Below, in pieces: positions 1 to 46,843 of a DNA stretch of 64,000 nucleotides. The DNA is from Andalucia godoyi And28. Lineage: Eukaryota; Protista; Jakobida. The position numbers and the translations under genes were made by a program. The stretch lies in the NCBI GenBank assembly GCA_009859145.1, contig VRVR01000005.1:153448-217447 (forward strand), written 5' to 3'. Each line of letters begins with the position of its first letter. Within the stretch, counting starts at the first letter, position 1. A model generated the notes under the pieces. The model ran no database searches, had not been told where the DNA came from, and saw only the letters and a list, made by a program, of their open reading frames with translations.

Positions 1-318
1 TTTAAGGGAAGGCGGTAGAAGAGGAAGATATGTATATTTGAGACAAGTGGAAAACTGTGGAGATGAAAAGCCAAATCGAAAATCAAAAAAGTTAGGGGGA
101 AAAATTGTTTCAAAGAGAAGAAACAAGAGAGAAGAAAAACACGAGGGAAAGCGTTCGTCAAGAAGAAGGAAAAAAACGATACGATAATCAGACATGGACA
201 TCGTTGGGACGATTCGTGTCGAATCGTAGGTGTTGTGTGTGTGTGGTTTCGTTTTCGGTGAACCGCACAGTCAGATGAGAGATGAAATTTTTGAAGAGAG
301 GATAGATGTTCAACGTTT

Positions 319-392
319 GGGCGTGTAGCTCAGCTGGTAGCAGCGCTCGCATGGCATGCGAGAGGTCAGGGGTTCGATTCCCCTCTCGTCCA
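319..392 (+). tRNA. tRNA-Ala, anticodon GGC
   Basis: Cloverleaf read by eye: acceptor GGGCGTG/CTCGTCC with the G3:U70 alanine identity pair and discriminator A; anticodon stem CTCGC/GCGAG with loop ATGGCAT (GGC at 353-355); T arm AGGGG-TTCGATT-CCCCT. No encoded CCA. One extra C in the D arm makes it 74 nt. Confidence 0.9.
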
Positions 393-396
393 GAAA

Positions 397-15667: not shown

Positions 15668-15752
15668 AAAGAAAACTGACAAAAGAGCATCCGCATCCTG
15701 TTCAAAAATTGAGATATCTTCACTTGTGCTGATTTGGATAATGTACAGATGG

Positions 15753-18419
15753 TTACAAATTATGATCCCGTAAACTCGTAGACAAGTCCACAGAATACAT
15801 GGGGATCTTGCGTGAGGTGGATGCAGAACTCGGTGCAGCACTCAATGGACGGCGTGAACCGGGCTGGCCGCCATGGTTCCTGTCCATTGCGGTCGACAAA
15901 TTGACAGACGAGCTGGAGGAAGGTTGAGAAGCTGGTTGAAGAGTAACTTGCTGCGTCTTGACACGCGCTATCCTCTGCAGTGCTTCTTTGACATCGTCTT
16001 GGCGATTGGCATCCATTCCAACAAACACCGCGAAATCAGCAAGAGATTTTCCCACAAGAGACAAAACGGACGCAGTAACTCGAGAATGTCTCCAAGGAAT
16101 ATGCCGCATCTGCGAATGGACAGCGGACAAACACTCCAACACTGACGTCATGGTCTTTTTCTCTGTAGCAGAGAAAACCGATGAGATGGAAGGGAACGAA
16201 GAACTCGGAGCTTGCACAACGACAATGCGCTTGTGTTGCCCCTCCACAACACCTTCCACCGTTGCAATGAACCACGCAGTTGCGGGTTTCTTGACAGTGG
16301 AGAAATACGTCGACAAGCGGGTCACCAAACGTTCAAAATCGACAATTGAGTGAATGCTATGTGCTGGCCAGTCTGCCCAATGGACTTCCAGAGCATGTTT
16401 TGATGAAGTTGCAGATACCGGCGTAGAAAGCGAGCACGGATCCGCAAGAGGGCCGTGAGACTCGACAACAGCGAACTGAGCAGTCAGTTGCGATGGAGCG
16501 TTCAAAGATTTTTTGAAAGCATCCGCAACCCATCGAGAAAGAACGCCGGGACCTCTGGATTTGCTGCCGATGGAAATTTCTTCGGAAAGCAAGTGATCAA
16601 GCAAAAAATAAACCACCGTTCCCGCTGTCGAGTCCTTGAAAACGTGCTTGGTAACGTCCGAATTTGTGGAATCCGGGAGGAAAATTCGATCAAGACCGTA
16701 CGAAGACTTTGCAGGAGGTGCAACCAGCAGCTGTGTTCGATCATCGCTCACGGAAACCATACTCGATGTAGAAGACAAGTTGAGGAAAACCTTGACAGAA
16801 ACGGGGTAAGGAGGCAACTGCTGAGCCTGAGATGCAGAAGATGTCAGAGCAGAGTCACGACGGACAGGAGACACAGACAAACTCTGCAACGTCAGTTCGT
16901 TGTCATCAGACGCACTGCGATCTCCGGCACGGTCATGACGATTAACTCCCTTTGGAGAAGCAGTGTCACCTTGGCTCTTCTTAATTTGTGCAATCAAGTG
17001 CTCCTCGCGAAACCGCACGAAAGAAAACACCCCTTCCAACAAATCTGCGGAAACGCGACCCAAATACTCGTTAAACTGATCACAGACAATTGTGGCATGC
17101 GCACGAAGCGTGACATTGTCCTTGCGAAGTTCAGAAGCATATCTGCGGATCTGTGCGCATCCAGAAGATGCTCGATGCAACCGCTGTCGGAATCCATCAT
17201 TGTCACGTTCCAGTTTCTGTCGGACAGATGCCCATTGCGATCGCTCACGTTCTCTCTCTGCATCCGCCTCGCGTTCTCGCTCACGAACGCTCCTCTTTTC
17301 CGGCACTTGCAACTGCAAATGCAGTTTCTGTTTTTCCTCTTCCGTCTCTGCAATTACTTTCTTCAGCTCTGCAACTTGACGTTCAAGATCCATGGACCAT
17401 GCCATGGCACCTGCGCGCTCTCGCTTTTCTTCTGCAAGCAGCCGCTCCATGCTCTGGTATCCATCCTCTTTTTGTTTCGCAGCGGCTTCCAAGCGGGCAG
17501 CGTCTCTCTTTGCAAGTTCAATTCTTTCTTGAAGCGCGGCAATCTGGGTCTGATACTCTGCAACACTGTGGCCATTGGTCTCGCCGTCCTCCTTTGCATT
17601 TTGATGGTCTTGGCCGTGCCTCTCGGGGGCCGTGGAATGGCCGAAAGACACTGCGGACTGAGAATCGACCAAGGATTTCACGAGGCCTTGCAATCTGGAA
17701 GTGTCCTTTTCCAGATTTGCATTCTCTTCTTCCAACTGCGCACATCTAGTTTGCAAGCTTCGCAGGGATGACTGCGAATTGTGAAGTGCATACTGTAAGT
17801 CAGCAACGGCTTCTCTGTGCGCCTTTTTCAACATAAGAATCTCTCTTTCATGTTGATCACGAGGGATAACGGGTACATTTTGGTACAACGGAGAAGGCAT
17901 CACAGGAGGCGGGGAGCCCAACATTTCGGGCTCGCCACTGGAAAGTGATGACAAGGCTCTGTGCTGGAATGACTGCTGTTGCGATGAGCTTGAATGCGAT
18001 GACCCCGATGAAGAAGGCATAAACTGGTGATTTTTGGATGCAGAGGCCGAACTCTGCAGAGCAGCGGATTCGGGACGCATGTCAGACGAGTCGAAATCCA
18101 AACTATCCAATGCCTCGTCGTCTCCAAGTGCGCCGGGTTGGTTCTGGACTCTTTGCCAACCAACTTCTGCAGCTCTTCGTTCCCATTCAACAATTTCATC
18201 GCGCTGTTTTTTTGATAGAGTCTTTTCTCGCTCTCGAGAGTCCTTTGCACGCTCGTTAAGCAAAAACCACTGGTCATCACTCACCTTCGCTCGAACAGCA
18301 GCCAGCTCAGCAAGCTCGGAGTCAGAAAGTTTGTCTTTTTTCTGTCGAGAAAGATTTTTCTTGAGCAAATAGATCAGACGATCATGCGACGGCAACGAAG
18401 CGTTATTATTCGGATCCAT
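15753..18419 (-). CDS. Coiled-coil protein with a degenerate C-terminal kinesin motor-like domain (pseudo-kinesin, kinesin-14-like layout)
   Basis: 888 aa. Central coiled coil; motor relics YGLDRIF, PGVLSR and HIPWRHSRVT; no GxxxxGKT, SSRSH or DLAGSE. Confidence 0.65.
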   Translation of the reverse strand: MDPNNNASLPSHDRLIYLLKKNLSRQKKDKLSDSELAELAAVRAKVSDDQWFLLNERAKDSREREKTLSKKQRDEIVEWERRAAEVGWQRVQNQPGALGDDEALDSLDFDSSDMRPESAALQSSASASKNHQFMPSSSGSSHSSSSQQQSFQHRALSSLSSGEPEMLGSPPPVMPSPLYQNVPVIPRDQHEREILMLKKAHREAVADLQYALHNSQSSLRSLQTRCAQLEEENANLEKDTSRLQGLVKSLVDSQSAVSFGHSTAPERHGQDHQNAKEDGETNGHSVAEYQTQIAALQERIELAKRDAARLEAAAKQKEDGYQSMERLLAEEKRERAGAMAWSMDLERQVAELKKVIAETEEEKQKLHLQLQVPEKRSVREREREADAERERERSQWASVRQKLERDNDGFRQRLHRASSGCAQIRRYASELRKDNVTLRAHATIVCDQFNEYLGRVSADLLEGVFSFVRFREEHLIAQIKKSQGDTASPKGVNRHDRAGDRSASDDNELTLQSLSVSPVRRDSALTSSASQAQQLPPYPVSVKVFLNLSSTSSMVSVSDDRTQLLVAPPAKSSYGLDRIFLPDSTNSDVTKHVFKDSTAGTVVYFLLDHLLSEEISIGSKSRGPGVLSRWVADAFKKSLNAPSQLTAQFAVVESHGPLADPCSLSTPVSATSSKHALEVHWADWPAHSIHSIVDFERLVTRLSTYFSTVKKPATAWFIATVEGVVEGQHKRIVVVQAPSSSFPSISSVFSATEKKTMTSVLECLSAVHSQMRHIPWRHSRVTASVLSLVGKSLADFAVFVGMDANRQDDVKEALQRIARVKTQQVTLQPASQPSSSSSVNLSTAMDRNHGGQPGSRRPLSAAPSSASTSRKIPMYSVDLSTSLRDHNL

Positions 18420-19300
18420 CTACACCGATGATGGCCTATTTAGGTATCTTTTTTTCTTCTTTTTTTTTTTTGAAACCTGAAAAATAGATGAGTTTTCTTC
18501 TTCTAATCAAATAAGAAAGGTAGGATGGTGAATGAAATCACGGGTTTTGCGTGTCGATCTGAATTCAACCGGGAAAAAAAAAAGAACAGCAGAAAGGAAA
18601 GAAAAAAACTTGTCATTGCAACAGAAAGGATCGGACAGCGGAAGCAAGGACAAACAAAATCAAGAGGCGTTGGGTTCTTGCGGCATGGGACTACAGTGGA
18701 TTCCGCTGCTCCAGAAGCTATTCTGCGGCTCCAGCGTGGAACAATGAAAACCGGCAGCATCCTCTCTCAGAGTGCCCTGGTTGCCGGAGTCCTATGAAGT
18801 TCACGTAAAACCATAGCGGCGTAGGATGGTATGCACCGTGACAGATGCTTTTTATGATAGGGGAGTGTGACAGTAACATGACATTTAAAAAAAGCCAGGA
18901 ATGGTACAAACGAGCCAGGCCGTGCGACCACAATCATTTTCGAGGGATCTTGTTCGACAGTGTTGACGAAATCGGCAGCGAGTCTGCAGGTATTTGATTG
19001 AATGGTACTCAGGAAAAATACCTGGATCAATCATTTGACAGCGACTTCCAAACATTGAAAGCATGCAAATGGAAATGGGGAAAAAACCAATGAACCGCTC
19101 TTCCAGAACAGATACGGAATGCCACGAATGAGAATTCTCATCACCGACGTTGTAGACGGCTTCGCGAGGTCTTGTACCATAAGACACAGTTCAGATGAAA
19201 CCGTGATTGCGAAATTTGTCGATCATGAAACCGTTGCCGTTTGGACGGGCACTCTTTCTTCAAACAATCGCGCAAACAGTCCTACAACCAGCCACACAAA

Positions 19301-19867
19301 TCACACCCGCTTAAAGATGTGTTCCTGGTAGTACTTTAGTTCTGCAATGGACTCGAAAATATCATCCATGGCTCTGTGCTTGCACTGCTTTGGAAAGACT
19401 GGGAGCTGTGGAAACCACCTTTTCGCAATTTCCTTGACTGAACTGACATCGATAATTCGATAATGCAGATACTGATCCAAACTCGGCATATATCTAGCCA
19501 AAAATCGCCTGTCCATATGCACGGTATTTCCGCCGAGTACAGCCTCGCCACGCTCACAATGCTGTGATACAAGGTCAAGAATTATCTTCTCAGCATCACG
19601 TTCGCTGACGACACTGTCGCGAACTTTGCGTGTCAGACCCGATTCGCCATGATGCTTTATGCACCAATCGTTCATTCCGTCTAAAACGTCGTCCGACTGA
19701 TGAATCACAATCGAGTCCACGGTTCCAAGGATATTAAGATCGCCATCGGTTAGAACCACTGCAACTTCAAGCAAACGACAGGTCTCCACATCAAGACCGG
19801 ACATTTCGCAGTCTACCCAAACAATGGGCATTCGAGCCTTCTGAGACACCGCCACACAATCACTCAT
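19301..19867 (-). CDS. REXO2: Oligoribonuclease (DEDDh 3'-5' exoribonuclease)
   Basis: IVWVDCEMSGLD, WCIKHHGESGL, GNTVHMDRRFL, LHYRIIDVSS and HRAMDDIFESIAELKYY motifs. Confidence 0.97.
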   Translation of the reverse strand: MSDCVAVSQKARMPIVWVDCEMSGLDVETCRLLEVAVVLTDGDLNILGTVDSIVIHQSDDVLDGMNDWCIKHHGESGLTRKVRDSVVSERDAEKIILDLVSQHCERGEAVLGGNTVHMDRRFLARYMPSLDQYLHYRIIDVSSVKEIAKRWFPQLPVFPKQCKHRAMDDIFESIAELKYYQEHIFKRV

Positions 19868-20663
19868 GTGCGTCCCTTTTTTTAATGGTCACCATATCCT
19901 TTCGACAGAACAAACCGGTGCAAGGCACGAGACGGAGAGAGATCCAAGCGCGTCTTCGATGCGCACTTTCGTACTACAGTGGATGTCACTCATCCGTTTC
20001 ACAGTGAATTGCAGACTTGCAATGTTGCAAGTTGCAAGAGAGATGGGATTAAAATCCCACTGACAAAAGGACAGGTCCGGACACATCACCACAGGCAGCG
20101 TTCTTCAGAAAAATGCGCAGCATCCCAATCATGCAGCCCAACACAGAGGTGGACATTCTATCTCACACCGTCTCTTGAGCGTAAAAGGCGACGGAGCACG
20201 CGGGTCGCGAAGTTCACACAGTGACGGAAGAGTGCACGTCCAAGCCACGTGGGGTGTGTGTGTATGAACATCCATCAGAAATTGGATGGTCGAAAAACGC
20301 ACCATTTCCAGTGTGTCCAGCGGCGATGGATCGCGATTGGAATGGGGGTACGCAATATCTATTTGAAGAACAGGATGCGCATGCAGATGTGTGTGCTGGA
20401 GACTGCCCCCCTCCCCTCTCCCTAAGACGACTGATGCAGCGTGTCGCAGACGTTAACAAAGGGGAAAATCAAGGGTGTTTCCTGCTGTACACCAGCCTGG
20501 GGTCTTTCAACGTTTTTTTGTTTTATTTTCTTGGGGGGGAGGGTTATTTTTGTTTTGTTTTCCCCCGCCCCGTGTTTCCTTTTCCCTTTCTCTCATCTCA
20601 TCAAGCGTTTTTCTGCGGAGCAAAGTTAGAATACCGAGTTTCAAGACTGTAGAAGACAAGAAA

Positions 20664-22040
20664 ATGCCGCATGCATTTCTTTTGCGATCGTCACCATCTC
20701 GAACGACTCCGTCATCTTCCATTCTTTCACAACGTGCAAATTTCGCAATAACAGGTACCTCGTCGAGTGCACATCTGCATGGAAACGCAGCTGCATCTCC
20801 TGCGACTCCATTGCGTCGTCCTTCTTCGGCATCGTCGCAAAGGACAAACATTCAAAGCAGCCCTGTGCATGTTTACTCAAATGGAACAAGTTCCTCGGTT
20901 CGAAAGCCGTTTGCAGCGGGACAACCGGCACCAATGCTGTTCGGATCTCCTCCACCAATCCCGAAAGGTAGTCGAATTTCACAATCCCATTCCGCACGAA
21001 GAGCTTCGAGACATGAGTATCTCTCAAGAGGTCGCGGCAGCGATCAACGTGATCAGCAATTTGAAGAAGGAAATGGTGACGAAGAACAACAGAAGCACAA
21101 CCGACTGTCGAGTAATTTCATCGACGAAGAAGATGCTGAAAATGTGCAGTTTGTCTATGGACCCATGGTGGATGTTATGAGAGAAGCGCAGGGAAGAATA
21201 TCGCGGGTTGCTCCGCAGCTGAATCTCCATGTTTTGGATCCGGCACACGCGGAACAGGCTTTTGCAACCACTCCAGATGTTGCGTTTGATTTGAAGAACT
21301 GGGAAGCATACGTCCACACAGTCTTGCAAGATTCGCGGAAGCTAGATGTGGACTCGCTGTCGCAGTTCAAATATCATAATCCCAATGTTCTGCGGGAGGA
21401 CCAGGTTTATGACGTATCGGATGCAAGACATTTCATGATGGCACACCAGGGACTTGCAGCCTCCACAAGAGAAAGGTTTGAGGAATTGACCAGGGAAGTT
21501 GCGTACTTGATTTCAGAGGCCGGGGTGTCGGGTAAGATGGTTCGATTATTCAGGCTGCTGCATGAAGAGTTGGATGGTTTGCAGTTGATTAAGGAGCATC
21601 TGTCTTCTGAGCATTCCCTATTGGCGAATGTCAAGGATGAGATTTCCAATCAAGTTGCAAGATTGCAGGCTCTCAAATCCTCTCTTGAAGATGAACTGGA
21701 AAAGGAGAAGGCGAGATTCAGCGATTGGACAAAAGAATTACAAGATCGGCTCCAATCAGCACGCAAAGAGACTCTAGTGTGGGCTGAAGAAGTTCGGAAG
21801 ATCGATGCTATTGTTCGAAATGCAGAGACGATGCATGCAGTTCTTTTCAAACCAACGGGAATGTCAAATGCGGACAAGGAAAGAGGATTTCACTACGCCA
21901 ATCCGGTGCCCATTGACTCGCAAACGTCACTTGCCCGTGACTTCGCGATCCGACCGCAGGATGCGTGGATCCGCTGGCTGGACAGGCAAGCATCCACGAT
22001 GCGTGAAGTTGTCGAGCGTCTCCGCAGTGGTGCCATGTAA
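20664..22040 (+). CDS. Hypothetical protein: Ser/Pro-rich N-terminus and coiled-coil C-terminal half
   Basis: ATG at 20664 after an A-rich leader; 458-aa open frame; heptad-like region around LKSSLEDELEKEKARF. Confidence 0.7.
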   Translation: MPHAFLLRSSPSRTTPSSSILSQRANFAITGTSSSAHLHGNAAASPATPLRRPSSASSQRTNIQSSPVHVYSNGTSSSVRKPFAAGQPAPMLFGSPPPIPKGSRISQSHSARRASRHEYLSRGRGSDQRDQQFEEGNGDEEQQKHNRLSSNFIDEEDAENVQFVYGPMVDVMREAQGRISRVAPQLNLHVLDPAHAEQAFATTPDVAFDLKNWEAYVHTVLQDSRKLDVDSLSQFKYHNPNVLREDQVYDVSDARHFMMAHQGLAASTRERFEELTREVAYLISEAGVSGKMVRLFRLLHEELDGLQLIKEHLSSEHSLLANVKDEISNQVARLQALKSSLEDELEKEKARFSDWTKELQDRLQSARKETLVWAEEVRKIDAIVRNAETMHAVLFKPTGMSNADKERGFHYANPVPIDSQTSLARDFAIRPQDAWIRWLDRQASTMREVVERLRSGAM

Positions 22041-22244
22041 GCTTCCTGAGACCGCACGTGAAGTTGCGGGGGTCCGTGATTTCGTGGTTGCGTGAATCCT
22101 TTTGCTAGAAATGAAGAGTGAACGTTGTTTACTCCTTTTCGGTTTGAAGAAAAAAATTACTTAATGTTGTTTTCCTTTGTGGAGCACACAGATACTCGAG
22201 TCTTCTTCTCAAACGCATCTGCGCAGACAAGATGCTAAATCTGA

Positions 22245-24830
22245 CTATGCGGGAGAGGAAACTGACGTGAAAGACAGAACCCGGACAACTGGTCGAGACA
22301 AAATATCGCCTCTGGACTCGAGAAGGTCATGCATTTTGACACAGCGGAGAACATCCATTCCAGTGACAATACGCATATCGTACTTAGTGACATAACCTTT
22401 GGTGTTGAAATGTTCGAGAACTGCGGTTTTGGCTTCCTTGTAGAAATACGGAGAGATATGACAAGACTGACACAAGTCAACTTCATCATCTTGCAATTCG
22501 AAAAAGCACGGCTCGTGGCTGACATCAATACCGGAGCCCCACTTTGGTTGGACAGGAACAAGTGAGGAAAGACCGATCAACCAGGCTTCGAAATCTGTAT
22601 CGGAATCGGCTACAACATCCAAAGTCTGTTTTGACTTGCCGTAATAGAGAGAGAAGGACCGGTAGAATTCTGGAGAACCAAAGGAGACGCCCCATTTCGC
22701 GAATAATGGTGAATATTGCCCGAGAACAAAGAGACGGACTTCTTCAAGGTTGACCGATTTCAGCGATCTGGCAACGTATTTGTCGCGCTCCTTACCAGGC
22801 CCAACTGACATCGCAGCATCCCAGTCTCTGACATCACAAAAGCAAAGACTCTTGCAATCAGATGACAAGAAAAAGTGCTTTTCTCCCGGCTTTGAAAACG
22901 GACGATACTTGGTTAGGTTGGTACCGTGCTGTAAAAACAAAATGACCTTCTCAACAAGGTCTTTGAGCTTCTTATCCTGCATTTCAGCATCTCTCAACAA
23001 GTTCTGCTCTTTCGCCCGCAGTCGGTCCCAATCTTCAACGCTCCAGTCCACAGGATGCTGGTCCATGTATCGCAGCGCATTGGACAATCCCTTGCTGTCA
23101 TCTGTCACTGCATTTAGTGAGATTTCCCTGTCATCAACACCCGCCTTGATGGTCTCGAATGTTTTCTTCAGAGAGGAAAGAAGATCCTTGTTAAGAGGTT
23201 CCCGGAGCACTGCATACTCTGGATCTCCGTCCTTCTCTGCAACTCCCTTCGAAGATATAACCTGTGATCTCCAGATGGCTCGCTGATCTGCCCACTGTTT
23301 TCGCTGTTCTGTCCGAGATGACCGAATAGACTCGTATGATTCGATGCGGTGAGTCATGGCTGCTCGAATCTCATCCTGAGCCAAGTCGCGTTTCCTCTCC
23401 AACGTACTTAGATGCATCCTCTTGTCTGAAATGGAACGTGAAAGCAGATTGATCTTTTCCTTTTCAGTCTCCGTATCCAATTTCGTCTGAGAGAGTTGTT
23501 GGTTCATCTCATTCACCTGTTTCTCAAATGCTTTTGGATCGTCACTCGCCAACTTCAACCGCAACACAGAGATGGCTGTAGAAGCTTCCGTAAGTTGATG
23601 TTGCGCATGATGAATATCGGATCTCAGAGCACTCATTGTTTCTTGTGCAAGCTTCGACACTTGTTCGTCAATTTGTTTTTGCAGCTCGGACTCTTTCTGC
23701 TTGGATTCCGCTTCCAGCTTGGCCCTTTTCAAGCAAATGGTCGACTCTAAACTCGTCAGCTCGCTGGAGGACAGTTTTGCGCCTCCTGTCACAGCAAGAG
23801 CGAGTGAAAATTCAAACTGCAAGCGCTTCATTTCTCGGTCCAACACGCACTTGTCAATTTTGAAATCTCGTCCAAAAGGTTGCACAGTCGCTCCTTTCAG
23901 CCCTCCGATTCTCGAAACAAATTGCAGTGCGAAGAATGATTCTTCGATATTGTCAACCGATACATTCACATGACTGCCAAGTATTACATGGTACAACGAA
24001 CCTGTGCCCATGACCAACTGCAACAACGCAGTGACATCTGCTCGATGAGCTGGCACGCGTAATCGATGCATCGTGATGGCATTCATGACGTCACCAAAGC
24101 AAGACATGCATTTCTGCAGATACGAAAAATTTCGGTCTCCAAGAAGCAACAAAGATTTTCGGGACATCCATTCCAATGAGACCACATCAACGAACAACAT
24201 GACCAAAGATTCTGATACCCAAATGATGGCAACCCGATGATAAGACTCAAACAAATCAATACTTCGATATGCTGCATCCGCAGTTTTGAACGATTGGTCG
24301 TCTGAAATGAGACTCGATACCGAGTGTTTCGATACCGACAAGTCCAATTTCATACGATGTACTCCAATTCGTGCACCAGGATTCTGTGGATCCAAGAGAT
24401 CGACCAACGAGCTGTTGCGAAGTGCAAACAGCGAGATCGATGCCGAGGGATTTGATTTTGCAAGATGTGAAAGAATAGAAGACAGCACTGAGACACCGCA
24501 GCCATCGGATGGGCTTCCAAAATGGGCGTTGTCGCGTGAACTCTTGGCGGTTCCCAGTGAAAAAGACACCACGCATTTCCCATTAGCAATTTGTGAAATT
24601 GCGTTATTTGAAATGCGATCCACAATGTGGGCCGCTGTTTTCTTTTCCAATACATTCGGAATCTCAAATTTTCGTGATTTGTACGGAAAATCCTTTGTTC
24701 CCGGTGGAACATTGAAGATGCAGGAGCTGTTGGAGGTCGGGTCAATCGTACAGCAAACAGGACCATCAGCGGAATCCAGGTGCAGAAAGGATTCTATTGT
24801 TACAGAATCGGTGGAATTTCGATTAGTCAT
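22245..24830 (-). CDS. Inactive kinesin-like protein: degenerate motor + coiled coil + PH domain + SWIRM/HTH-like C-terminus (TbPH1-like architecture)
   Basis: ATG at 24830. Motor relics SLFALRNSSLVDLL, LFVDVVSLE and VPAHRADVTALLQ. PH domain LQHGTNLTKY...TLDVVADSDTDFEAWLIGL. C-terminal DEVDLCQSCHISPYFYKEAK...MDVLRCVKMHDLL resembles the ADA2 SWIRM domain. Confidence 0.75.
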   Translation of the reverse strand: MTNRNSTDSVTIESFLHLDSADGPVCCTIDPTSNSSCIFNVPPGTKDFPYKSRKFEIPNVLEKKTAAHIVDRISNNAISQIANGKCVVSFSLGTAKSSRDNAHFGSPSDGCGVSVLSSILSHLAKSNPSASISLFALRNSSLVDLLDPQNPGARIGVHRMKLDLSVSKHSVSSLISDDQSFKTADAAYRSIDLFESYHRVAIIWVSESLVMLFVDVVSLEWMSRKSLLLLGDRNFSYLQKCMSCFGDVMNAITMHRLRVPAHRADVTALLQLVMGTGSLYHVILGSHVNVSVDNIEESFFALQFVSRIGGLKGATVQPFGRDFKIDKCVLDREMKRLQFEFSLALAVTGGAKLSSSELTSLESTICLKRAKLEAESKQKESELQKQIDEQVSKLAQETMSALRSDIHHAQHQLTEASTAISVLRLKLASDDPKAFEKQVNEMNQQLSQTKLDTETEKEKINLLSRSISDKRMHLSTLERKRDLAQDEIRAAMTHRIESYESIRSSRTEQRKQWADQRAIWRSQVISSKGVAEKDGDPEYAVLREPLNKDLLSSLKKTFETIKAGVDDREISLNAVTDDSKGLSNALRYMDQHPVDWSVEDWDRLRAKEQNLLRDAEMQDKKLKDLVEKVILFLQHGTNLTKYRPFSKPGEKHFFLSSDCKSLCFCDVRDWDAAMSVGPGKERDKYVARSLKSVNLEEVRLFVLGQYSPLFAKWGVSFGSPEFYRSFSLYYGKSKQTLDVVADSDTDFEAWLIGLSSLVPVQPKWGSGIDVSHEPCFFELQDDEVDLCQSCHISPYFYKEAKTAVLEHFNTKGYVTKYDMRIVTGMDVLRCVKMHDLLESRGDILSRPVVRVLSFTSVSSPA

Positions 24831-25225
24831 TTCTCGTAATTGAAGTGGGAACACCGCTGGTGTATGAGACGAAACAATTAAATTGTTCAGTCATCGGGAG
24901 AAGAAAAACCAAGAACAGTGAAAAACGTCGAGCAAAAAATTGAAGACAACGAATCGTTAAAAAACAATCGCATTTGTTACAGTGGATATCCTGCACATTG
25001 TTTTCGAAATTTCTCAGAAAAATATCCTGTCAGAAACCCAACAATGACAGGCTGCTCAGAATTCGTTTCAGATTCAGATTTAGTTTTTTTGGCCCAAACA
25101 ATTTTTTTTCTGAACCCCCCGCTGACTTCCGGCGACCCTTCACCTCGCCGAACGTGCGTCCAGATTCCCCCGCCCCTCCCGTTCATTTTTGCGCGCGCGA
25201 CGCTCGAGACAAATCTTGCTTCACC

Positions 25226-26356
25226 ATGTCTGCCGACGCCGTGACCGCGGAGGCGCTCGCTACTCAGAAGCTGAAGCCCCGGTACTCCACAGCGGAGTAT
25301 CATACGATTGCTGCTTTTTCTCCAGAAGCACGCTGACGAGCTCTCGAGTCTGTTCGTCGATGCTGTCAGCCGAAATTCGAAAGGCGGTGGGATCCCAAGC
25401 TCGTCGTTGCAGTCTGGGCGCCGCACCATGTTTGAAACGAAGCGACAATTCTGGGCGTATGTCGTCGAGAATGCACGGAGCGAGGCGAAACTGAACGCCG
25501 TGTTTCCCGAGCCTATTCCGGGATCCCTTCGTCCACTGGACCCAAACAGGACTGGTGACGCTGTCTGCGAGCACTACAATTCGGCGCTTGTGAAGCAGTA
25601 TCGGACAGGGAAGCGGCAGTATATTGGGCTGACTGGCAACCAGGATCCTTCGGATGCCGACCTCGAGCACAAACTGCGTGATTCGCGTTCGACGTCGAGA
25701 AGCGAGGAACAAGTATCCGCGGTCATGCAACAGATCAGTAAATACCGGAAGGCGTATCCCAAATGGCAGGAACAGGAGCCCCTGATGAAGACATGGACCG
25801 CATCAAACAAATGCAACCTCGAGTGACGTTGCCGTACGCGATTTCCGGCGAAGACGTCGCTGCGAACCCCGCGACTGTGGACAAGACGATCGAAGAATTG
25901 CAGGGCTTGAACGGTGCGGACCCAGGAGGGTGGCAGGAAGAAGGGGACTTGTCTTCCCCACCGGAACCGGGTGCGCCATCACGGAAACGACGACGGACGC
26001 GGCAGCGGATGGTCGAAGTGGATGCTGACGAGCGTTTTTTCGAGAAGATGGACAGCAGTGCGGAAAAATTCGTCACGCAGCTCTCCGAGTGTTGCTCTTG
26101 CACGATCAGCGTTGTCACACCAACCACCTCTCCTGGCGCACCACACGGCCTTCCGGAGGAATGGCAGAGGCAGTTGTAAGCGACGAACTCGCGTCTCAAT
26201 GAGTTGCGTTCCGAAATGAGAGTGGTCAACGAGCTTCGTGAAGACGTGAGAGCGCTGATGGGCGGCAGGCACGGTCGAGTGCAACCAACTCGACGGTCGA
26301 GGAGAATATGTGACCTCGACGGTGATATCAAATGCAGGTTTTACCTTTACCTCTAA
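25226..26356 (+). pseudogene. Myb/SANT(MADF)-like DNA-binding accessory gene of a Harbinger element, frameshifted
   Basis: ATG at 25226 gives KPRYSTAEYHT, a +1 shift gives LLFLQKH...KRQFWAYV, and a second shift gives EDMDRIKQMQPRV. Premature TAA at 26177-26179 precedes a coiled-coil tail. Converges on the transposase remnant. Confidence 0.55.
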
Positions 26357-26934
26357 TCGTGGTTCTGAGAGTCCGATACTCCCGAAAGTTCTCTGGTACA
26401 TCGTCATGCGCGAGAACGAAGTTGTGTAGTGCTGCACATGCGACGATCACGCCTCAAATGAAGGGAATCGATCGGAATTCCATCCTATGCTTGAGTATTC
26501 GCCATCGGTTCTTACGATCCCCCAGAGGCAGCGTCGTCCGCAAAAGAACGCGTTAAATCGGTGGTTGCGAATCTTCTGCTCTCGGTTTGCCCCCTCGTTG
26601 TTGTACCGCCGTTTTTTCCACTGCGGTGCTTCCTCGGATATGGTGACCTCATTCATCCGAAACCAAGTTGTGAACGAGGCCTGCAATGGATAGCCTGCGT
26701 CGGCGGACACGTAGTATCCGTTGTTGGCAAAGTTGTCTCGCCGCTTCAAAACCATGACTCCTTCAGAGCCGTGGAATCGTGAGTCGAGCGTAGACATATG
26801 AGCAACATGTCGGTTATCGTGGGAAGCGCAAGCACGGAAAAATCAGTCGAACCATCGTCCAAAACATCCCGAAACAATGAAATACAGAACAAACATTCTA
26901 CAGCTGGAAGCCCATTGAAATCGGAACAACACAC
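26328..26934 (-). pseudogene. PIF/Harbinger (HARBI1-like, DDE_Tnp_4) transposase remnant
   Basis: Across three frames: STHDSTALKES, GYYVSADAGYP, HRFN and KNRWRILKHRMEF...*GVIVACAALHNF. Contains frameshifts and an internal TGA; the N-terminal half is not found. Confidence 0.85.
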
Positions 26935-27359
26935 CGATGTGCTAAAGGATTGACAAAGCGAACTGCCAAAATATAAAGAATTCGTTTTTATAAGGCTCCA
27001 GTATCGGCAAACCAGTTGTCGAGCGTAACATCCATCGCTCGTCTTTCACGTCGAGCAACCATCGAATACTGTACTGGACAACATGAAAGACCTCCAGAAA
27101 AAAACTGCTCCAGCGCTAAATTCAGTTCGGGCAGGGGGGAATCGCATCCGAAGACAATGAATGGCAGTGGCGCAGGGGAAATGGGAAAATTCAACCTTCA
27201 ACAAAAAGGTGGGGGAAAGGTCCCGGTCGTCGCCGAATTACAGGGTTTTTGTCATTCTATCTGGCAGTTTCGGCATAAATACTTTGGTTCTTAAGAGACA
27301 TTCGCATTTCGGTGAAGAATAACAGCATTTGCGTAAAACACCAGGGGGGGGGGGGGGGG

Positions 27360-28632
27360 TTGAAATGCCAACTGCGCCAAAAGGTTTGTTAGCTACCCGT
27401 GGAATGTGAAACGTGCGTTTCAAACAGGGGTAACGGAGGGAAACAGAAAATAAAATGCACAAAGTGCAAACTGTCCGACACGTCTTAAAAGATCTAGCCA
27501 CAAAGCGTTACTGCCCCGAAGATGATAAGAATTCTGTGCACAAAGCAAGATGTGATTACATGATTCAAAAACGCTTCTCAACGAAGAAACTCCTTCGCGA
27601 AAAGAGTGCAGGACAGACCAACCTTCCGAACTGGCCTGTTCTTCCAAGTCAGTTCTTTGTTTGATGAGGCATCAAATGACAACTATGCGTGTCGGAAGAA
27701 AACAAGAAACGGTACTCGATACTGTCGTCTTTTAAGCAAGTCGGTAAGTGGACACATGTAATGGGCCACATCCTGAGACTATTCAGTGCAGAAGAGTGAT
27801 GTATCCAATTACGGGAGAATGCAGCACACAACATAGCATAATAAAAGCAGCCAAATGTTTCGGCACTTCTACAAATCCACTCTTGACTCTTCTTTGATTT
27901 GCCAACAAGCCACGGCTCAAGAATAAGACAAGATCGAGAATATCAACTTGCGTGATTGTCAGCTTACTTCCGTCTCAAAAAGTGGTCTGGAATGTAAGTG
28001 TTCATCTAGAATGCCAGCTGATGCTTTTCAGGTCAAGAGTTCGCTGTCATGACGTTTCCACAGTTCACGAACAGGCTCAGTTGGCATGTTATTCTTTCCA
28101 TGACCCAGCATGTTCTGTCGTCATAAGAAAAAACTGACTACTTTGTGAGATGTGACCTGCACCGCTTACCTTTCATCTGATAGTTGAAGAATTCATATCC
28201 ATCGCGGCTGATAGTGTTTCGTCCTTGAACAACAGCCACAGAATGTTTCGAAAAGCGGCATCCTCGTGGACAGTAGATTAATCAGTGGGTGTTCCAGTTC
28301 CAGGAACTCTTATGTATGGTATGGATGACTGGTTGGATTTCTTTTCTATTTTTTTGTTAAAAAGCACAGTAGTGGCACAACGATTAGCACTTGGCAACCC
28401 AGATGGAATGTTTGAACTCCGAATGACAGTGTCGGCTCGCCCTTCATTTCGTCTGCTTATCGACGAAATTTTGCCGAGATATCGGTTCACGTCCTCGTTG
28501 AACTCAACGGTCGGAAATGACGTTGTCCAATGTGTTCTCTTTGCATTGCAGACTGAGGTTAGCAGTGTTGGAAATGCTCGTTTCGCATTCCACGGGTAGC
28601 TAGCAAATGTTTTGGCGCAGTTGGGATTTCAA
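27360..28632. mobile_element. Non-autonomous TIR element (MITE-like), 1273 bp
   Basis: 66-bp imperfect terminal inverted repeats, 27360-27425 versus 28567-28632, 58/66 identical by manual alignment. No intact internal ORF. Confidence 0.75.
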
Positions 28633-29262
28633 TAGGTAACACATTGATGCGCGGTTCCATCGACGTGCAACAGCTTTCGCATGACATTTCCATTCGCATT
28701 AATCTTGAAAGAAGATCCGTCGGTTCGAAGCCTCCTTTTATCCTGGGCTGCTCTTGCTGATTTTTAATCTTTTTTGTCAGGATTGTTAAATTGGCGTGCC
28801 TGTAGCTTGCAGTTTCTCCTTCCAAGAAAATGTGCATTTCTGGAACTTCCTCCCGACTTGTCCCTCTGATTCTCTACATGGAAACATGCTGTCGTGCGCT
28901 CCTCGAAACAAAGTTCTTCTGCCAATACCATGTAAGTGTTGTGTCGACGTGGTCTTTGTTTTCTTTGTTTTTCTCTGCCTTTCGTTGCCACGTAAAGTGT
29001 TCATTGATATATATATATATACATATTTATATATATTGTTTTTTGTCCAGTGGCCTCGGATTTGAGTCATTTTCGTCTGTTGTTTTCCGATATGGCGAAT
29101 GTGGCAAGAATTATCCATCATCGAGGTGAGTTGAAAAACGACTTTACAACGTGTCCATAACTTTGCACGGCACAAAAACACACAGGAAAAGAGTGCCGGC
29201 TATTCGAATGCAAGTTCTTTCTCGTTGACAAACAGAAGAAGAGCCAGCGAATTGCAAGCGAT

Positions 29263-31143
29263 TTATGATCTTCTGTTGGGAGCCTTTTTGGAGGAAGTTT
29301 GGCCGGCAGGAGAACCCACTGCAGGTTGTCCGCCCTTTTCTCGCTCTCGCTTGGAGATGACTCTCGAAGACCTCGCTTTAAGCTCATCACGCGTGAGCGG
29401 CCGATCATCATCCTCTGCGTCTCCATCGGAATCAGCATCATCGCCGAACTCGTCTCCGGTTGACGGAGGCTGAATTGAAATGTGCTGCGATCCAGCAGGA
29501 GCAGCTGGACCCGGAAATGCTGCAAGGCTTCGTGTGGATGCAGCATTTGCATTTCCGTTGCTTGATGCGTTCTGAAGATCAGCATCTGCAGAAGCCTCCA
29601 ACTGCAACAGATCGTCGTCTGCCATAGTTTGGTCGATTGATCGCTGAAGCAAACCATTATACGAAGCCAACAGCTCGTTGGTGCGCTGCTCAATGACTCC
29701 GAGATAGAGCATCATATTGCTCTCTGTAACGTTGGTGACAGCAGCATGAGTGCTATTTGCGTCATCCGCATTATCTGACGCCGCAGGTTTAGAAAGGGCA
29801 CTGGTGTCAGCAGAAACGGACTCTGCATCACATCCAGCACGATCAAATACACCTTGAATTCCTCCCTTAAGCTCATTGAGAATTCGCTGTGCATCTTCTG
29901 CGCGGGTTTCAAACTCTTGTGCACGAGCCTCGGTCTTTGCCAACCGATCGCCCAGATCCGTGAGAATGCGTTTGCGCTGCGAATCCGATGACGCACCAGC
30001 TCCCTTGAATCTGTCCATTTCTCCACGGATTTCTGTAATCTGTTCTTCCAAACGCTCAATCTCGTTGTTGAGCTCGTTGACGTAGTTGAACAGGGAGAAG
30101 TTCCGGTCCTCGGCAACAACGAACTTGTCGACCAATTCATCCATATCTTGGATTCCTGTCGCAGATCGGATCTTTGCAACTGCCGATTCATATTCTGCAG
30201 CTTTTTCACTGGCTTCTTGTTGTAACGCACGATCGCGAGATGCGACAACGGCGGCCTTCGATTGCGAATGAGAACCGGAGGCCTTGGTTGGGGATTGGGC
30301 ATCGTTTCCGTCCTCCCCCGTCGCAGCCCCGTCGGCCCCGCTTCCGGAACCACCTGCAGCGCCTCCAGTGCGATTGCGCTCCTTCGCCTTCAAGAACTCC
30401 TTCTGTTTGCGATCGTTTTCAAGAGTCCGTTCCAACTTGCGGAATTCGTCGTCGATTGCAGCCATTTCACGCTCTGCAAGCTGTCGCTGTGCAGCCAGCT
30501 CATTCTGTGCAGCATCGCGCTCTTCATAAGCAAGATTGGAAACTTCAATGACCCCTGCCATTCCACGTTTCTTTTCGTGCAGCTCCCGCTCAAGTTTCTT
30601 GTAAATTCCGTCAAAAACAACTCGTTCCTGGCGAAGATTATCGATATCTTCTCGAAGCGTGCGGTTAACTGCGAGTGCTTCATTAAACTTCACAAGAGCT
30701 TTGTCCAATCGGTTCTCAAGAATGCGAACCTGCTTGTCCACCGCGGCTGCAGTTTCCTTGATGGCAGACTCTCCGCCTGTTGACTCCTTCTTTTCTTTGT
30801 ATTTGCCGGCGAACAGCTTGGACTGGCGATCTAGTTCATCGACACGGCGGCGTTCAGATTCAAGCTTCCGAGTGAGAGATTCGATTTGGTCCTGTAGCGA
30901 AGACACGCGAGAAGAGACTGCAACACTCTCCTTGTGCGAAAGCGGCTTTGAAAAGTGAGAAAGTTCTTCGCGCAAATGCTCGTTCTCGCTCTTCAGTTTA
31001 TCAATTGCTACTTTTTGCTTCTTGATCGTCGAAGATGCTTCTTCAGTGTAAGACCGACGGTCGCCCTCCATAATCCGATACTTGCGACTCAGTTCCGTCA
31101 GCTCCGCTTCCACAGCAGACTTATCTCCACCACCTTTTGACAT
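29263..31143 (-). CDS. ODAD1: Outer dynein arm docking complex subunit DC2 (ODA1/CCDC114/CCDC63 family)
   Basis: LSRKYRIMEGDRRSY, RILENRLDKALVKFNEALAVNRTLREDIDNLRQER, FVVAEDRNFSLFNYVNELN and NMMLYLGVIEQRTNELL motifs. Confidence 0.92.
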   Translation of the reverse strand: MSKGGGDKSAVEAELTELSRKYRIMEGDRRSYTEEASSTIKKQKVAIDKLKSENEHLREELSHFSKPLSHKESVAVSSRVSSLQDQIESLTRKLESERRRVDELDRQSKLFAGKYKEKKESTGGESAIKETAAAVDKQVRILENRLDKALVKFNEALAVNRTLREDIDNLRQERVVFDGIYKKLERELHEKKRGMAGVIEVSNLAYEERDAAQNELAAQRQLAEREMAAIDDEFRKLERTLENDRKQKEFLKAKERNRTGGAAGGSGSGADGAATGEDGNDAQSPTKASGSHSQSKAAVVASRDRALQQEASEKAAEYESAVAKIRSATGIQDMDELVDKFVVAEDRNFSLFNYVNELNNEIERLEEQITEIRGEMDRFKGAGASSDSQRKRILTDLGDRLAKTEARAQEFETRAEDAQRILNELKGGIQGVFDRAGCDAESVSADTSALSKPAASDNADDANSTHAAVTNVTESNMMLYLGVIEQRTNELLASYNGLLQRSIDQTMADDDLLQLEASADADLQNASSNGNANAASTRSLAAFPGPAAPAGSQHISIQPPSTGDEFGDDADSDGDAEDDDRPLTRDELKARSSRVISKREREKGGQPAVGSPAGQTSSKKAPNRRS

Positions 31144-46600: not shown

Positions 46601-46843
46601 TTGGGCTTTCGCAGGAGGAAGATCTCTGGAAGAGGATGCATTCTTCCCTTTCTTTTCTGTATTCAACACAGAGCCTGCATGCGCACGCTTCATGGGAAGC
46701 TGAATCGCATCATTGGGAATCGTTCCTGCGAAGGCAAGCCTGTTCTCCAGTTTCTGCGAATTGGACAGCGCTGCAGAAGCCAGTTCTGTGGGAGGTCTGC
46801 GACGATCAGGACGCAATTCCTGGGGTCTGTTGTTATCCGACAT
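34637..46843 (-). CDS. DNAH6: Axonemal inner-arm dynein heavy chain, DNAH6-like
   Basis: About 4068 aa with no intron needed. P-loops [24 protein letters not shown] and [16 protein letters not shown]; C-terminal [23 protein letters not shown]. The N-terminal NPYDLEIV...[11 protein letters not shown] suggests the DNAH6 subtype (subtype less certain than family). Confidence 0.9.
   Translation of the reverse strand: [4068 protein letters not shown]

What the first reader, a model, noticed from the sequence alone, without database searches (positions are those of the whole stretch)
22245..24830. Dead kinesin + coiled coil + PH + SWIRM/HTH protein resembling trypanosome TbPH1
Seen: the P-loop position reads GTAKSSRD instead of GxxxxGKT, switch II reads DVVSLE instead of DLAGSE, and SSRSH is reduced to a YHRV-like relic. 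A coiled coil, a clear PH domain and an ADA2-SWIRM-like helical end follow. Known: Trypanosoma brucei PH1 has this layout (inactive motor, coiled coil, PH, HTH), partners kinesin KifX2 and localises to the microtubule quartet. Inference: this genome has cis-spliced introns and strand-mixed genes, so it is not organised like a kinetoplastid. A PH1-type protein here would push this membrane-microtubule adaptor back to an older flagellar-root system.
Basis: partly seen in the sequence, partly recalled or inferred. Interest (0 to 1): 0.7.

Follow-up and report, generated by a model that had tools for sequence, protein, structure and literature searches.

The report
Dead kinesin with PH and SWIRM domains

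Summary
Window 22245..24830 (minus strand) is one intact 861-aa gene.

- **Residues 1-320:** a kinesin motor fold with all three nucleotide motifs ruined (GTAKSSRD, YHRV, DVVSLE).
- **Residues 321-612:** a helical neck and stalk.
- **Residues 627-758:** a PH domain.
- **Residues 770-845:** an ADA2-type SWIRM bundle.

The protein belongs to a kinesin-coiled coil-PH-SWIRM family. Most members have working motors: jakobids, a malawimonad, euglenids, diplonemids, kinetoplastids.

I identified TbPH1 itself (963 aa, P93/R95). Its clade spans all Euglenozoa and has its own signature: a PKR P-loop, an ALGDSERP switch II and two inserts in the C-terminal region. The window protein lacks these.

It does share PH1's derived RLRVP loop-12 motif. 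Its motor scores better on a PH1 profile than on an active-motor profile, which other dead lineages do not. Its stalk aligns with PH1's, and it groups with PH1 in 185 of 200 NJ bootstraps.

Pairwise reciprocity is ambiguous, and long-branch attraction is possible.

Verdict: a PH1-like pseudokinesin, probably a deep sister of PH1 and possibly convergent. The source organism was not identified. The genome is strand-mixed and compact, unlike a kinetoplastid.

The parts
22245..24830 (-). Complete CDS of the 861-aa pseudokinesin (stop codon at 22245..22247); single exon
   Evidence: ORF list. The database copy P0001 starts at this ATG. Translation verified.
23871..24830 (-). Degenerate kinesin motor domain (aa 1-320)
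   Evidence: Clade profile against PDB: all 60 listed hits are kinesin motors, E down to 1.8e-9. AF2 model has low confidence (pLDDT 52, pTM 0.59), yet the top 50 Foldseek PDB hits are all kinesin motor domains or kinesin-containing complexes (E about 1e-7, TM about 0.45). Pfam Kinesin does not hit.
24531..24554 (-). P-loop relic GTAKSSRD (aa 93-100) in place of GQTGSGKT
24231..24242 (-). Switch I relic YHRV (aa 197-200) in place of SSRSH
24171..24188 (-). Switch II relic DVVSLE (aa 215-220) in place of DLAGSE
24030..24068 (-). Loop-12 / alpha5 motif HRLRVPAHRADVT (aa 255-267), replacing the HIPYRDSKLT of active members. The RLRVP core is shared only with the PH1 clade and a few PH1-like sequences.
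   Evidence: Motif table over 82 family members. Shared derived residues R256, L257, R258. This stretch is the most conserved part of the pseudo-motor within the window clade.
22995..23870 (-). Neck and helical stalk (aa 321-612), probably a coiled coil
   Evidence: Almost free of Pro/Gly and rich in charged residues. hhalign to the PH1 stalk gives 96% probability, E 1.4e-9 over 200 columns, against 37% for the active members' stalk. Residues R321, D322, R506 and W520 are shared with PH1.
22557..22952 (-). PH domain (aa 627-758)
   Evidence: Pfam PH_12, E 4.5e-8, above the cut-off. Model pLDDT 91.3. Best Foldseek hit is the PLC-delta1 PH domain 1mai, E 9e-7, TM 0.71 normalised to the target.
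22296..22523 (-). SWIRM-type helical bundle (aa 770-845), the 'homeodomain-like fold' of the TbPH1 paper
   Evidence: phmmer to ADA2 SWIRM 2aqe, 2cuj and 2elj, E 0.04-0.09. Foldseek to 2cuj: rmsd 1.1 A over 80 columns, 26% identity, TM 0.71 normalised to the target. Pfam SWIRM hits in three homologues, best E 4e-7.

Best explanation
**What it is.** The gene encodes a catalytically dead kinesin-like protein (a pseudokinesin). It belongs to a widespread eukaryotic family built as kinesin motor, neck and coiled coil, PH domain, SWIRM domain. TbPH1 and a T. brucei 1085-aa kinesin that is probably TbKifX2C belong to the same family.

**Shown here.**
- The N-terminal domain is kinesin-derived but has lost the P-loop, switch I and switch II.
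- The C-terminal PH and SWIRM domains are intact and are the most conserved part: 82% identity over the C-terminal 250 aa to the closest relative, against 52% over the N-terminal 350 aa.
- The gene is an intact ORF in at least four lineages that are only 38-64% identical.
- Inside the pseudo-motor, conservation peaks on alpha4-loop12-alpha5 and on alpha6 plus the neck.

**Inferred mechanism.**
1. It no longer hydrolyses ATP.
2. It still docks on microtubules through alpha4-L12-alpha5. This is the tubulin-binding face of kinesins by established knowledge, and here it carries extra arginines (RLRVPAHR).
3. It pairs through its neck and stalk with an active kinesin of the same family, as TbPH1 does with TbKifX2A and as Vik1 does with Kar3.
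4. It uses the PH-SWIRM module to hold a membrane or a protein partner. It would then work as a static microtubule-to-membrane or cargo adaptor at a specialised microtubule array, such as a flagellar root.

**Evolution.** It is most likely a deep sister of the Euglenozoa-wide PH1 clade that branched off before PH1 gained its inserts. It is not an orthologue nested inside that clade.
For: **Kinesin origin and dead motifs:**

**PH and SWIRM:**

**Family breadth and active consensus** (YGQTGSGKT, SSRSH, LVDLAGSER; Pfam Kinesin in 34 of 50 members).

**TbPH1 identified,** and its clade found in euglenids, diplonemids and prokinetoplastids. Full-length colinear alignment of the window protein to TbPH1: 20% identity, E 2e-29.

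**PH1-like character of the motor and stalk.**
- The RLR[VI]P motif occurs only in the window clade, PH1 and a few PH1-like sequences.
- Window-clade members share 14-20 PH1-specific residues. The 12 active members checked share 0-8, and other dead lineages share 3-12.
- The window motor scores 56 bits on the PH1-motor HMM and 20 bits on the active-motor HMM. Barthelona, Gefionella, Artemidia, D. japonicum, four unnamed degenerate members and the trypanosome 1085-aa kinesins all score higher on the active HMM.
- The stalk aligns to the PH1 stalk at 96% probability by hhalign.
- NJ/Scoredist bootstraps for window clade plus PH1: 185/200 on all columns, 183/200 on the motor, 146/200 on the stalk, and 155/200 on the motor after removing the motif columns.

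**Purifying selection and context:** relatives P0002, P0123 and P0004 keep the ORF. Synteny is conserved in L001 and L002. Conservation peaks at aa 232-275 and 296-330.
Against: **Against a PH1 relationship.**
- The window protein lacks every signature that defines the PH1 clade: the PKR P-loop, the ALGDSERP switch II and both C-terminal inserts.
- Its PH-SWIRM module scores higher on the active-member profile (200 bits) than on the PH1 profile (138 bits), and never groups with PH1 in bootstraps (0/200).
- BLASTP is stronger to the active Andalucia kinesin (E 4e-39) than to TbPH1 (E 2e-29).
- Local phmmer reciprocity is ambiguous in both directions.
- The PH1 profile search did not return the window protein, although that search is limited by its word index.
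- In the NJ tree the next neighbours are other dead lineages (Barthelona, then Gefionella). This is what long-branch attraction among degenerate motors would produce.
- No maximum-likelihood tree could be run.

**Against the mechanism.**
- Microtubule binding, dimerisation, lipid binding and localisation are all untested.
- The beta1-beta2 loop of the PH domain has K...K-H-F rather than the classical K-Xn-(K/R)-X-R phosphoinositide motif. This is read directly from the sequence, and the motif is from general knowledge.
- The N-terminal structural model has low confidence (pLDDT 52).
Confidence: 0.6

Rival explanations
1. Convergent pseudokinesin. An active kinesin-CC-PH-SWIRM paralogue in this organism's own lineage lost its ATPase independently of Euglenozoan PH1. 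The likeness to PH1 would then reflect a shared family and parallel relaxation, not common descent of the dead state. Function could still be PH1-like.
For: Different substitutions at every catalytic motif: S-R-D against P-K-R, and VSLEW against GDSERP. No PH1 inserts. The PH-SWIRM module is closer to active members. The BLASTP hit to the active Andalucia kinesin is stronger than to TbPH1. Motor decay has clearly happened several times in this family: Barthelona, Gefionella, Artemidia, D. japonicum and an unnamed group with a CCGSER switch II. The NJ tree nests the dead lineages next to each other.
Against: The RLRVP, R321/D322 and W520 residues are shared specifically with PH1. Other dead lineages do not prefer the PH1 motor HMM, but the window clade does. 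The stalk, which is not subject to catalytic decay, aligns with the PH1 stalk at 96%. Support for window clade plus PH1 persists after removing the motif columns.
Confidence: 0.33
2. Chromatin or nuclear role. The ADA2-type SWIRM domain points to a histone, DNA or SAGA-like function, with the kinesin relic acting only as a scaffold.
For: SWIRM domains are best known from ADA2, LSD1 and SWI3 chromatin proteins. The closest structural match is ADA2 SWIRM.
Against: The same PH-SWIRM module sits at the C-terminus of dozens of bona fide active kinesins. In T. brucei, the PH1 protein carrying this fold is cytoskeletal and sits on the microtubule quartet (bioRxiv 10.1101/2021.09.29.462327). Pfam found no other chromatin domain in the protein.
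Confidence: 0.04
3. Still an active but atypical ATPase or motor that uses a non-canonical nucleotide pocket.
For: None directly. A basic residue (R99) sits where the P-loop lysine would be.
Against: The P-loop Gly, Lys and Thr, the switch I SSR, and the switch II D-x-x-G-x-E glycine are all replaced. These positions also vary among the closest relatives: GTAKSSRD, GNSNTSRD, GNVGSHRD, and an indel in P0004. Pfam Kinesin and the family's active-motor HMM fail to detect the domain.
Confidence: 0.03

Closest known systems
Trypanosoma brucei TbPH1 (Tb927.3.2490) and its Euglenozoa-wide clade
   Same: Same order of parts: inactive N-terminal kinesin fold, neck and coiled coil, PH, SWIRM/homeodomain-like fold. 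The two proteins align colinearly over their full length. They share the RLR[VI]P loop-12 motif, the R-D neck residues and a stalk tryptophan. The motor and stalk are PH1-like by profile.
   Different: PH1 has G-x-R-x-T-P-K-R and ALGDSERP; the window protein has GTAKSSRD and VDVVSLEW. PH1 carries an insert of about 30 aa inside the PH domain and another of about 20-30 aa before the WG motif; the window protein has neither. Identity is only 20%. Reciprocity is not clean. Partners and localisation are known only for TbPH1.
Active kinesin-CC-PH-SWIRM kinesins: a T. brucei 1085-aa kinesin that is probably TbKifX2C (XP_845409.1), Andalucia godoyi ANDGO_08305, Stygiella, Jenningsia, Papus, and Diplonema papillatum 'KIN-7N'
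   Same: Same architecture and the same PH-SWIRM signature (LGQ.S..F, FYRSF, DFEAW, WG..LD, E..LC...HI.P). The window's PH-SWIRM module is closest to these.
   Different: Most of these keep GQTGSGKT, SSRSH and DLAGSE and are recognised by Pfam Kinesin. The window protein has none of these motifs. The accession-to-Tb927.6.2880 link for the T. brucei protein was not verified; it rests on organism, length, chromosome-sized contig and domain content.
Vik1/Cik1, the non-catalytic kinesin-like partners of yeast Kar3
   Same: A kinesin-fold domain without a nucleotide site. It heterodimerises by a coiled coil with an active kinesin and adds a second microtubule-binding head. The TbPH1 authors draw the same analogy.
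   Different: No sequence relationship beyond the kinesin fold. The motor-like domain is C-terminal in Vik1. Vik1 has no PH or SWIRM domain.

Membership tests
PH1 clade (TbPH1 orthologues, Euglenozoa) | N-terminal domain of kinesin-motor descent | tested here: met
   Profile against PDB: all 60 listed hits are kinesins, E 1.8e-9. Foldseek top 50 are all kinesin motor domains or kinesin-containing complexes.
PH1 clade (TbPH1 orthologues, Euglenozoa) | Walker A with Gly to Pro and Thr/Ser to Arg (G.R.TPKR) | tested here: not met
   The window has GTAKSSRD (Ser-Arg-Asp at the G-K-T positions). TbPH1 and most of the PH1-type sequences have xPKR.
PH1 clade (TbPH1 orthologues, Euglenozoa) | Degenerate switch II of the form [AV]LGDSERP | tested here: not met
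   The window has VDVVSLEWMSR.
PH1 clade (TbPH1 orthologues, Euglenozoa) | Loop-12 motif xRLR[VI]P in place of HIPYRDSKLT | tested here: met
   The window has MHRLRVPAHRADVT. The motif is absent from all active members.
PH1 clade (TbPH1 orthologues, Euglenozoa) | Insert of about 30 aa inside the PH domain and a second insert before the WG motif | tested here: not met
   In alignment A5 the window clade has the short, active-type state at both places.
PH1 clade (TbPH1 orthologues, Euglenozoa) | Groups with PH1 to the exclusion of active kinesins in phylogeny, or is a reciprocal best hit | tested here: inconclusive
   NJ bootstrap 185/200 as sister of the whole PH1-type group. The PH-SWIRM region gives 0/200, phmmer reciprocity is ambiguous, and long-branch attraction is not excluded. 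No ML tree was possible.
PH1 clade (TbPH1 orthologues, Euglenozoa) | Binds an X2 kinesin and localises to the microtubule quartet or a flagellar root | not testable with these tools
   Only 64 kb of the genome is available, and it holds no active kinesin. Localisation needs experiments.
Kinesin-coiled coil-PH-SWIRM family (includes the probable TbKifX2C and jakobid, euglenid and diplonemid kinesins) | Colinear architecture with the conserved PH-SWIRM signature | tested here: met
   121 relatives at E<=1e-3, most matching query residues 620-848. Consensus motifs in A2 and A5. HMM score of 200 bits on the active-member PH-SWIRM profile.
Kinesin superfamily, functional motors (Pfam PF00225) | P-loop GxxxxGK[ST], switch I SSRSH, switch II DxxGxE; Pfam gathering score | tested here: not met
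   No Pfam Kinesin hit. All three motifs are replaced.
PH domain | Pfam PH model above the gathering score, and the PH fold | tested here: met
   PH_12 at 34 bits against 27. Foldseek to 1mai, E 9e-7.
SWIRM domain (ADA2 type) | SWIRM helical bundle | tested here: met
   Sequence evidence alone is only E 0.04. A confident model superposes on 2cuj at 1.1 A. Pfam SWIRM hits three homologues.

The most novel reading that the evidence does not exclude
The dead-kinesin adaptor of the PH1 type, together with its active PH-SWIRM kinesin partners, did not arise in kinetoplastids with the microtubule quartet. It predates the split of Euglenozoa from at least one other compact-genome flagellate lineage (the window clade, known so far only from this genome, metagenomes and unassigned read sets). 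It may go back to the common ancestor of the 'excavate'-type flagellar apparatus. The X2/PH1 system would then be an ancient kit linking microtubular roots to membrane.
Probability: 0.4. Interest if true: 0.6.

Novelty: new variant of a known kind. Interest (0 to 1): 0.5.

Why it matters
The only paper in the searched library that mentions KifX2A, which is also the only one characterising TbPH1, treats X2 kinesins as kinetoplastid-specific. It treats the microtubule quartet as trypanosomatid-restricted, and suggests the two co-evolved.

The searches here show three things.
- True PH1 (PKR P-loop) is present in euglenids and diplonemids.
- The same kinesin-CC-PH-SWIRM architecture occurs in jakobids with working motors. 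It also occurs in a malawimonad and in Barthelona with degenerate motors.
- A further, differently decayed dead-motor lineage exists in a genome that is not organised like a kinetoplastid.

This turns a parasite-specific curiosity into a candidate conserved module of flagellar-root biology. It also offers several independent or anciently related pseudokinesins for asking which parts of a kinesin head must be kept for a non-motor role. In this clade, those parts are alpha4-L12-alpha5 and the neck.

For a specialist this is a useful extension rather than a surprise.

Tried and rejected
**Attempts to identify the source organism, none of which succeeded.**
- A full-length dynein heavy chain search timed out.
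- An 856-aa dynein fragment gave only hits of 58% identity or less from scattered taxa.
- PDB comparison showed only that the dynein is DNAH6-type, and that ODAD1 is closest to the Tetrahymena and Chlamydomonas DC2 proteins rather than to trypanosomatid ones.
- An unknown 888-aa neighbour has no PDB relative.
- Exact-sequence look-ups of window proteins and of the Andalucia paralogue found no contig.
- The read-set accession SRR28285705 appears in no paper.

**The Andalucia godoyi lead.** The published description of that genome fits the window: about 20 Mb, 12% of the characterised genes with introns, spacers of 44-691 nt, neighbours mostly in opposite orientation.
- Peptide look-ups in its supplementary table found nothing, but the stored copy is truncated and does not reach the relevant categories.
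- Codon usage is only loosely similar: RSCU r = 0.68, GC 0.53 against 0.49.
- I leave this as a lead, not a finding.

**Other dead ends.**
- An HMM of the family's active motors found no kinesin elsewhere in the window, and did not even detect the dead motor.
- Rfam and the tRNA scan found only one tRNA.

**Rejected readings.**
- Pseudogene: the ORF is intact and conserved in at least four lineages.
- Kinetoplastid origin of the window: the genes are strand-mixed, and the protein is far more divergent from TbPH1 than Euglena's PH1 is.
Full report
**1. The observation**

The window holds an 869-codon ORF at 22245..24854 on the minus strand. The public protein collection holds the same product starting at the ATG at 24830 (P0001, 861 aa). 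The finding's coordinates are therefore the CDS plus its stop codon.

Direct translation gives these strings:
- GTAKSSRD at 24531..24554 (aa 93-100)
- YHRV at 24231..24242 (aa 197-200)
- DVVSLE at 24171..24188 (aa 215-220)

Pfam recognises only a PH domain (PH_12, residues 635-766 of the ORF, E 4.5e-8, 34 bits against a cut-off of 27). A single-sequence search of PDB gave only weak hints of a kinesin (E 0.025) and of ADA2 SWIRM domains (E 0.04-0.09).

**2. The N-terminal domain is a decayed kinesin motor**

I aligned the first 350 or so residues of the window protein with three relatives (A3) and searched the profile against PDB sequences.
- 104 chains matched at E<=1. All 60 listed are kinesin motor domains. 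The best was Kar3 at E 1.8e-9, covering profile positions 52-312.
- The printed alignment puts 'fslGnakssrDn' on 'faYGQTGSGKT', 'yHrv' on the 'SH' end of SSRSH, and 'lvdvvsaeytsRk' on 'LVDLAGSERLNS'.
- The AlphaFold model of this domain has low confidence (pLDDT 52, pTM 0.59). Even so, its 50 best Foldseek matches in PDB are all kinesin motor domains or kinesin-containing complexes (E about 1e-7, TM about 0.45).

**3. The C-terminal module**

An alignment of the last 250 residues with 15 homologues (A5) gave a confident model (pLDDT 91.3, pTM 0.83). Foldseek finds two domains in it:
- a PH domain: PLC-delta1 1mai, E 9e-7, TM 0.71 normalised to the target
- a SWIRM bundle: mouse ADA2-like 2cuj, rmsd 1.1 A over 80 columns, 26% identity, TM 0.71 normalised to the target

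Three homologues hit Pfam SWIRM directly (best E 4e-7). By my own knowledge, SCOP classes SWIRM within the homeodomain-like superfamily, which would fit the 'homeodomain-like fold' reported for TbPH1.

Between the motor and the PH domain, residues about 350-525 are almost free of Pro and Gly and are 33-45% E/K/R/Q. This fits a helical stalk. I did not run a dedicated coiled-coil predictor, and the heptad signal is patchy.

**4. Relatives**

The word-indexed search found one relative: P0002, 64% identical, on a 3.6-kb Logan contig. The exhaustive HMMER search found 121 proteins at E<=1e-3.

*Close relatives ('window clade').*
- P0003/P0123: 47% identical, from a JGI metagenome and Logan
- P0004: 38% identical, from Logan
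- fragments P0005, P0006 and P0114

*Conservation and context.*
- All full-length members keep an intact ORF, and all have decayed motifs.
- Against P0002, identity is 82% over the C-terminal 250 aa and 52% over the N-terminal 350 aa.
- Synteny is conserved. A convergent coiled-coil neighbour is present in L001 and L002. L002 also keeps ODAD1 and DNAJC11 at the corresponding positions.

*Distant relatives.* Most match only residues 620-848, the PH-SWIRM module, at the C-terminus of proteins 850-1100 aa long. The consensus of 50 such proteins reads YGQTGSGKT ... SSRSH ... LVDLAGSER ... HIPxRxSKLT, and 34 of the 50 hit Pfam Kinesin.

*Named members (taxonomy).*
- jakobids: Andalucia godoyi ANDGO_08305 and Stygiella
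- the malawimonad Gefionella
- the metamonad Barthelona
- an unclassified eukaryote, TZLM1-RC
- euglenids: Jenningsia, Entosiphon and Euglena
- diplonemids: D. papillatum 'KIN-7N', Lacrimia, Namystynia and Artemidia
- prokinetoplastids: Papus and Apiculatamorpha
- trypanosomes, including a T. brucei 1085-aa kinesin that is probably TbKifX2C

The kinesin-CC-PH-SWIRM architecture is therefore widespread. Its ancestral state is an active motor.

**5. TbPH1 and its clade**

In the motif table a set of dead-motor members stood out, with a P-loop of G.R.TPKR and a switch II of ALGDSERP. A profile of nine of them (A4) retrieved P0261.
- P0261 is 'hypothetical protein, conserved / PH domain-containing' of T. 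brucei TREU927, 963 aa, on a 1.65-Mb contig.
- It has P93, K94 and R95, and weighs 110.1 kDa.
- This matches the published TbPH1 exactly: 110 kDa, G93P, T/S95R.

The clade includes Euglena gracilis and E. longa (two copies each), Entosiphon (two copies), several diplonemids and Apiculatamorpha. PH1 is therefore Euglenozoa-wide. The papers I could search do not say this.

**6. Is the window protein a PH1?**

*Against.*
- It has none of the PH1 signatures. Its motifs are S-R-D rather than P-K-R, and VSLEW rather than GDSERP.
- It lacks both PH1 inserts, one of about 30 aa inside the PH domain and one of about 20-30 aa before the WG motif.
- Its PH-SWIRM module scores 200 bits on the active-member profile and 138 bits on the PH1 profile.
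- BLASTP is stronger to the active Andalucia kinesin (25% identity over 660 aa, E 4e-39) than to TbPH1 (20%, E 2e-29, though colinear over the full length).
- Local phmmer with the N-terminal two-thirds gives intermixed PH1 and active hits in both directions.

*For.*
- The window clade and PH1, plus three PH1-like sequences (P0067, P0039, P0115), are the only members that replace the loop-12 HIPYRDSKLT by xRLR[VI]P.
- Window-clade proteins share 14-20 residues that are PH1-specific. The 12 active members checked share 0-8, and other dead lineages share 3-12. The shared residues include R256, L257, R258, R321, D322, R506 and W520.
- The window motor scores 56 bits on a PH1-motor HMM and 20 bits on an active-motor HMM. 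Every other degenerate lineage tested prefers the active HMM.
- The stalk aligns with the PH1 stalk at 96% probability (E 1.4e-9, 200 columns), and with the active members' stalk at only 37%.
- NJ/Scoredist bootstraps place the window clade as sister of the whole PH1-type group:

| Columns used | Support (of 200) |
|---|---|
| All columns | 185 |
| Motor only | 183 |
| Stalk only | 146 |
| Motor after deleting the P-loop, switch and L12 columns | 155 |
| All columns after the same deletion | 185 |

*Caveat.* The next neighbours in that tree are the dead Barthelona and Gefionella proteins. Attraction among degenerate long branches is therefore a live concern, and I could not run a likelihood tree.

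*My reading.* A deep sister of PH1 is somewhat more likely than convergence, roughly 55 to 35.

**7. How it probably works**

*Shown.*
- The nucleotide pocket is destroyed and is not even conserved among close relatives.
- Within the pseudo-motor, conservation peaks at aa 232-275 (alpha4-L12-alpha5): 27% invariant against 12% overall, and mean pairwise identity 0.50 against 0.34.
- It peaks again at aa 296-330 (alpha6 plus neck): 26% invariant, 0.52 pairwise identity.

*Inferred from established kinesin structure-function and from the TbPH1 paper.* The protein keeps the tubulin-binding face and the dimerisation neck. It pairs with an active kinesin of the same family and uses the PH-SWIRM module for membrane or partner binding. 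It would thus act as a static adaptor on a specialised microtubule array.

*Limits.* Lipid binding is uncertain because the beta1-beta2 loop lacks the full classical basic motif. No active kinesin lies in the 64-kb window, so the partner cannot be named.

**8. Genome context**

Genes with firm identities alternate strands: a DNAH6-type dynein heavy chain, ODAD1, DNAJC11, a 5xRRM protein, a TMC protein, a kinase and others. They are mostly single long ORFs with short spacers.

An AP-mu-like gene looks split by an intron, but I did not verify splicing.

The organism remains unidentified. The organisation matches the published description of the jakobid Andalucia godoyi, but direct tests were inconclusive.

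**9. Verdict**

This is a PH1-like pseudokinesin of a widespread family. It is not a demonstrable member of the PH1 clade proper. It is a new variant of a known kind, of moderate interest.

Noticed in passing
window 20475..22040 (+); L001 2740..3579 (-); L002 7948..9753 (-): A coiled-coil protein with no Pfam family lies convergent to the pseudokinesin gene, 205 bp away in the window and 43 bp away in L001. It keeps this position in two relatives (43% and 22% identity). It may be a conserved gene pair, or just local synteny.
   Followed up: partly
window 13733..31143 compared with L002 1..13780 (JGI metagenome 3300042934): The gene order DNAJC11, an unknown protein of about 800 aa, the coiled-coil neighbour, the pseudokinesin, then ODAD1 is conserved with a metagenome contig whose pseudokinesin is only 47% identical. 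L002 has an extra ABC2-membrane gene between ODAD1 and the pseudokinesin. The window has 4.4 kb without long ORFs at that place.
   Followed up: partly
protein family level (P0252-P0268, P0023, P0027, P0033, P0047, P0112): True PH1 (PKR P-loop) is present in euglenids (two copies each in Euglena gracilis, E. longa and Entosiphon), in diplonemids and in a prokinetoplastid. The kinesin-CC-PH-SWIRM architecture occurs in jakobids with active motors, and in Gefionella and Barthelona with degenerate ones. The literature I could search calls the X2 family kinetoplastid-specific.
   Followed up: partly
P0010, P0074 (Barthelona), P0013 (Gefionella), P0064 and P0086 (diplonemids), P0061/P0072/P0078/P0092 (unnamed): Motor motifs have decayed repeatedly in this family, including a group with an IECCGSER switch II and no SSRSH. 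The T. brucei 1085-aa kinesin that is probably TbKifX2C reads GAAGSGKT, GSRSS and DLVGSN. Its switch I and switch II are therefore not canonical either.
   Followed up: no
window 318..393 (+): The only RNA gene found is a tRNA-Ala that ARAGORN reads with anticodon GGC. To my knowledge eukaryotes normally use AGC (read as IGC) for this codon box, so a G34 tRNA-Ala would be unusual.
   Followed up: no
window 34637..46885 (-): An uninterrupted 4082-codon ORF encodes an inner-arm dynein heavy chain of the DNAH6 type. The best PDB matches are mammalian DNAH6 and a Chlamydomonas chain. The trypanosomatid chains score clearly lower.
   Followed up: partly
window 48468..50114 (-): An adaptor-complex mu-like gene starts its long ORF without an ATG. 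A short upstream ORF (49962..50114, beginning MVSLRCLWILDPNYRVVWSRY) looks like the missing longin-type N-terminus, which suggests one or two spliceosomal introns.
   Followed up: no
window 24900..29260: About 4.4 kb upstream of the pseudokinesin has no ORF of 200 aa or more on either strand. Two adjacent plus-strand ORFs (25308..25826 and 25763..26179) could be exons of one gene.
   Followed up: no
P0114 (141-aa fragment): A further fragment carries window-clade motifs (DALPSEL and MHRIRVPLHRSSLT). The window clade therefore has at least five sampled lineages, all from unnamed environmental or read-set assemblies.
   Followed up: no
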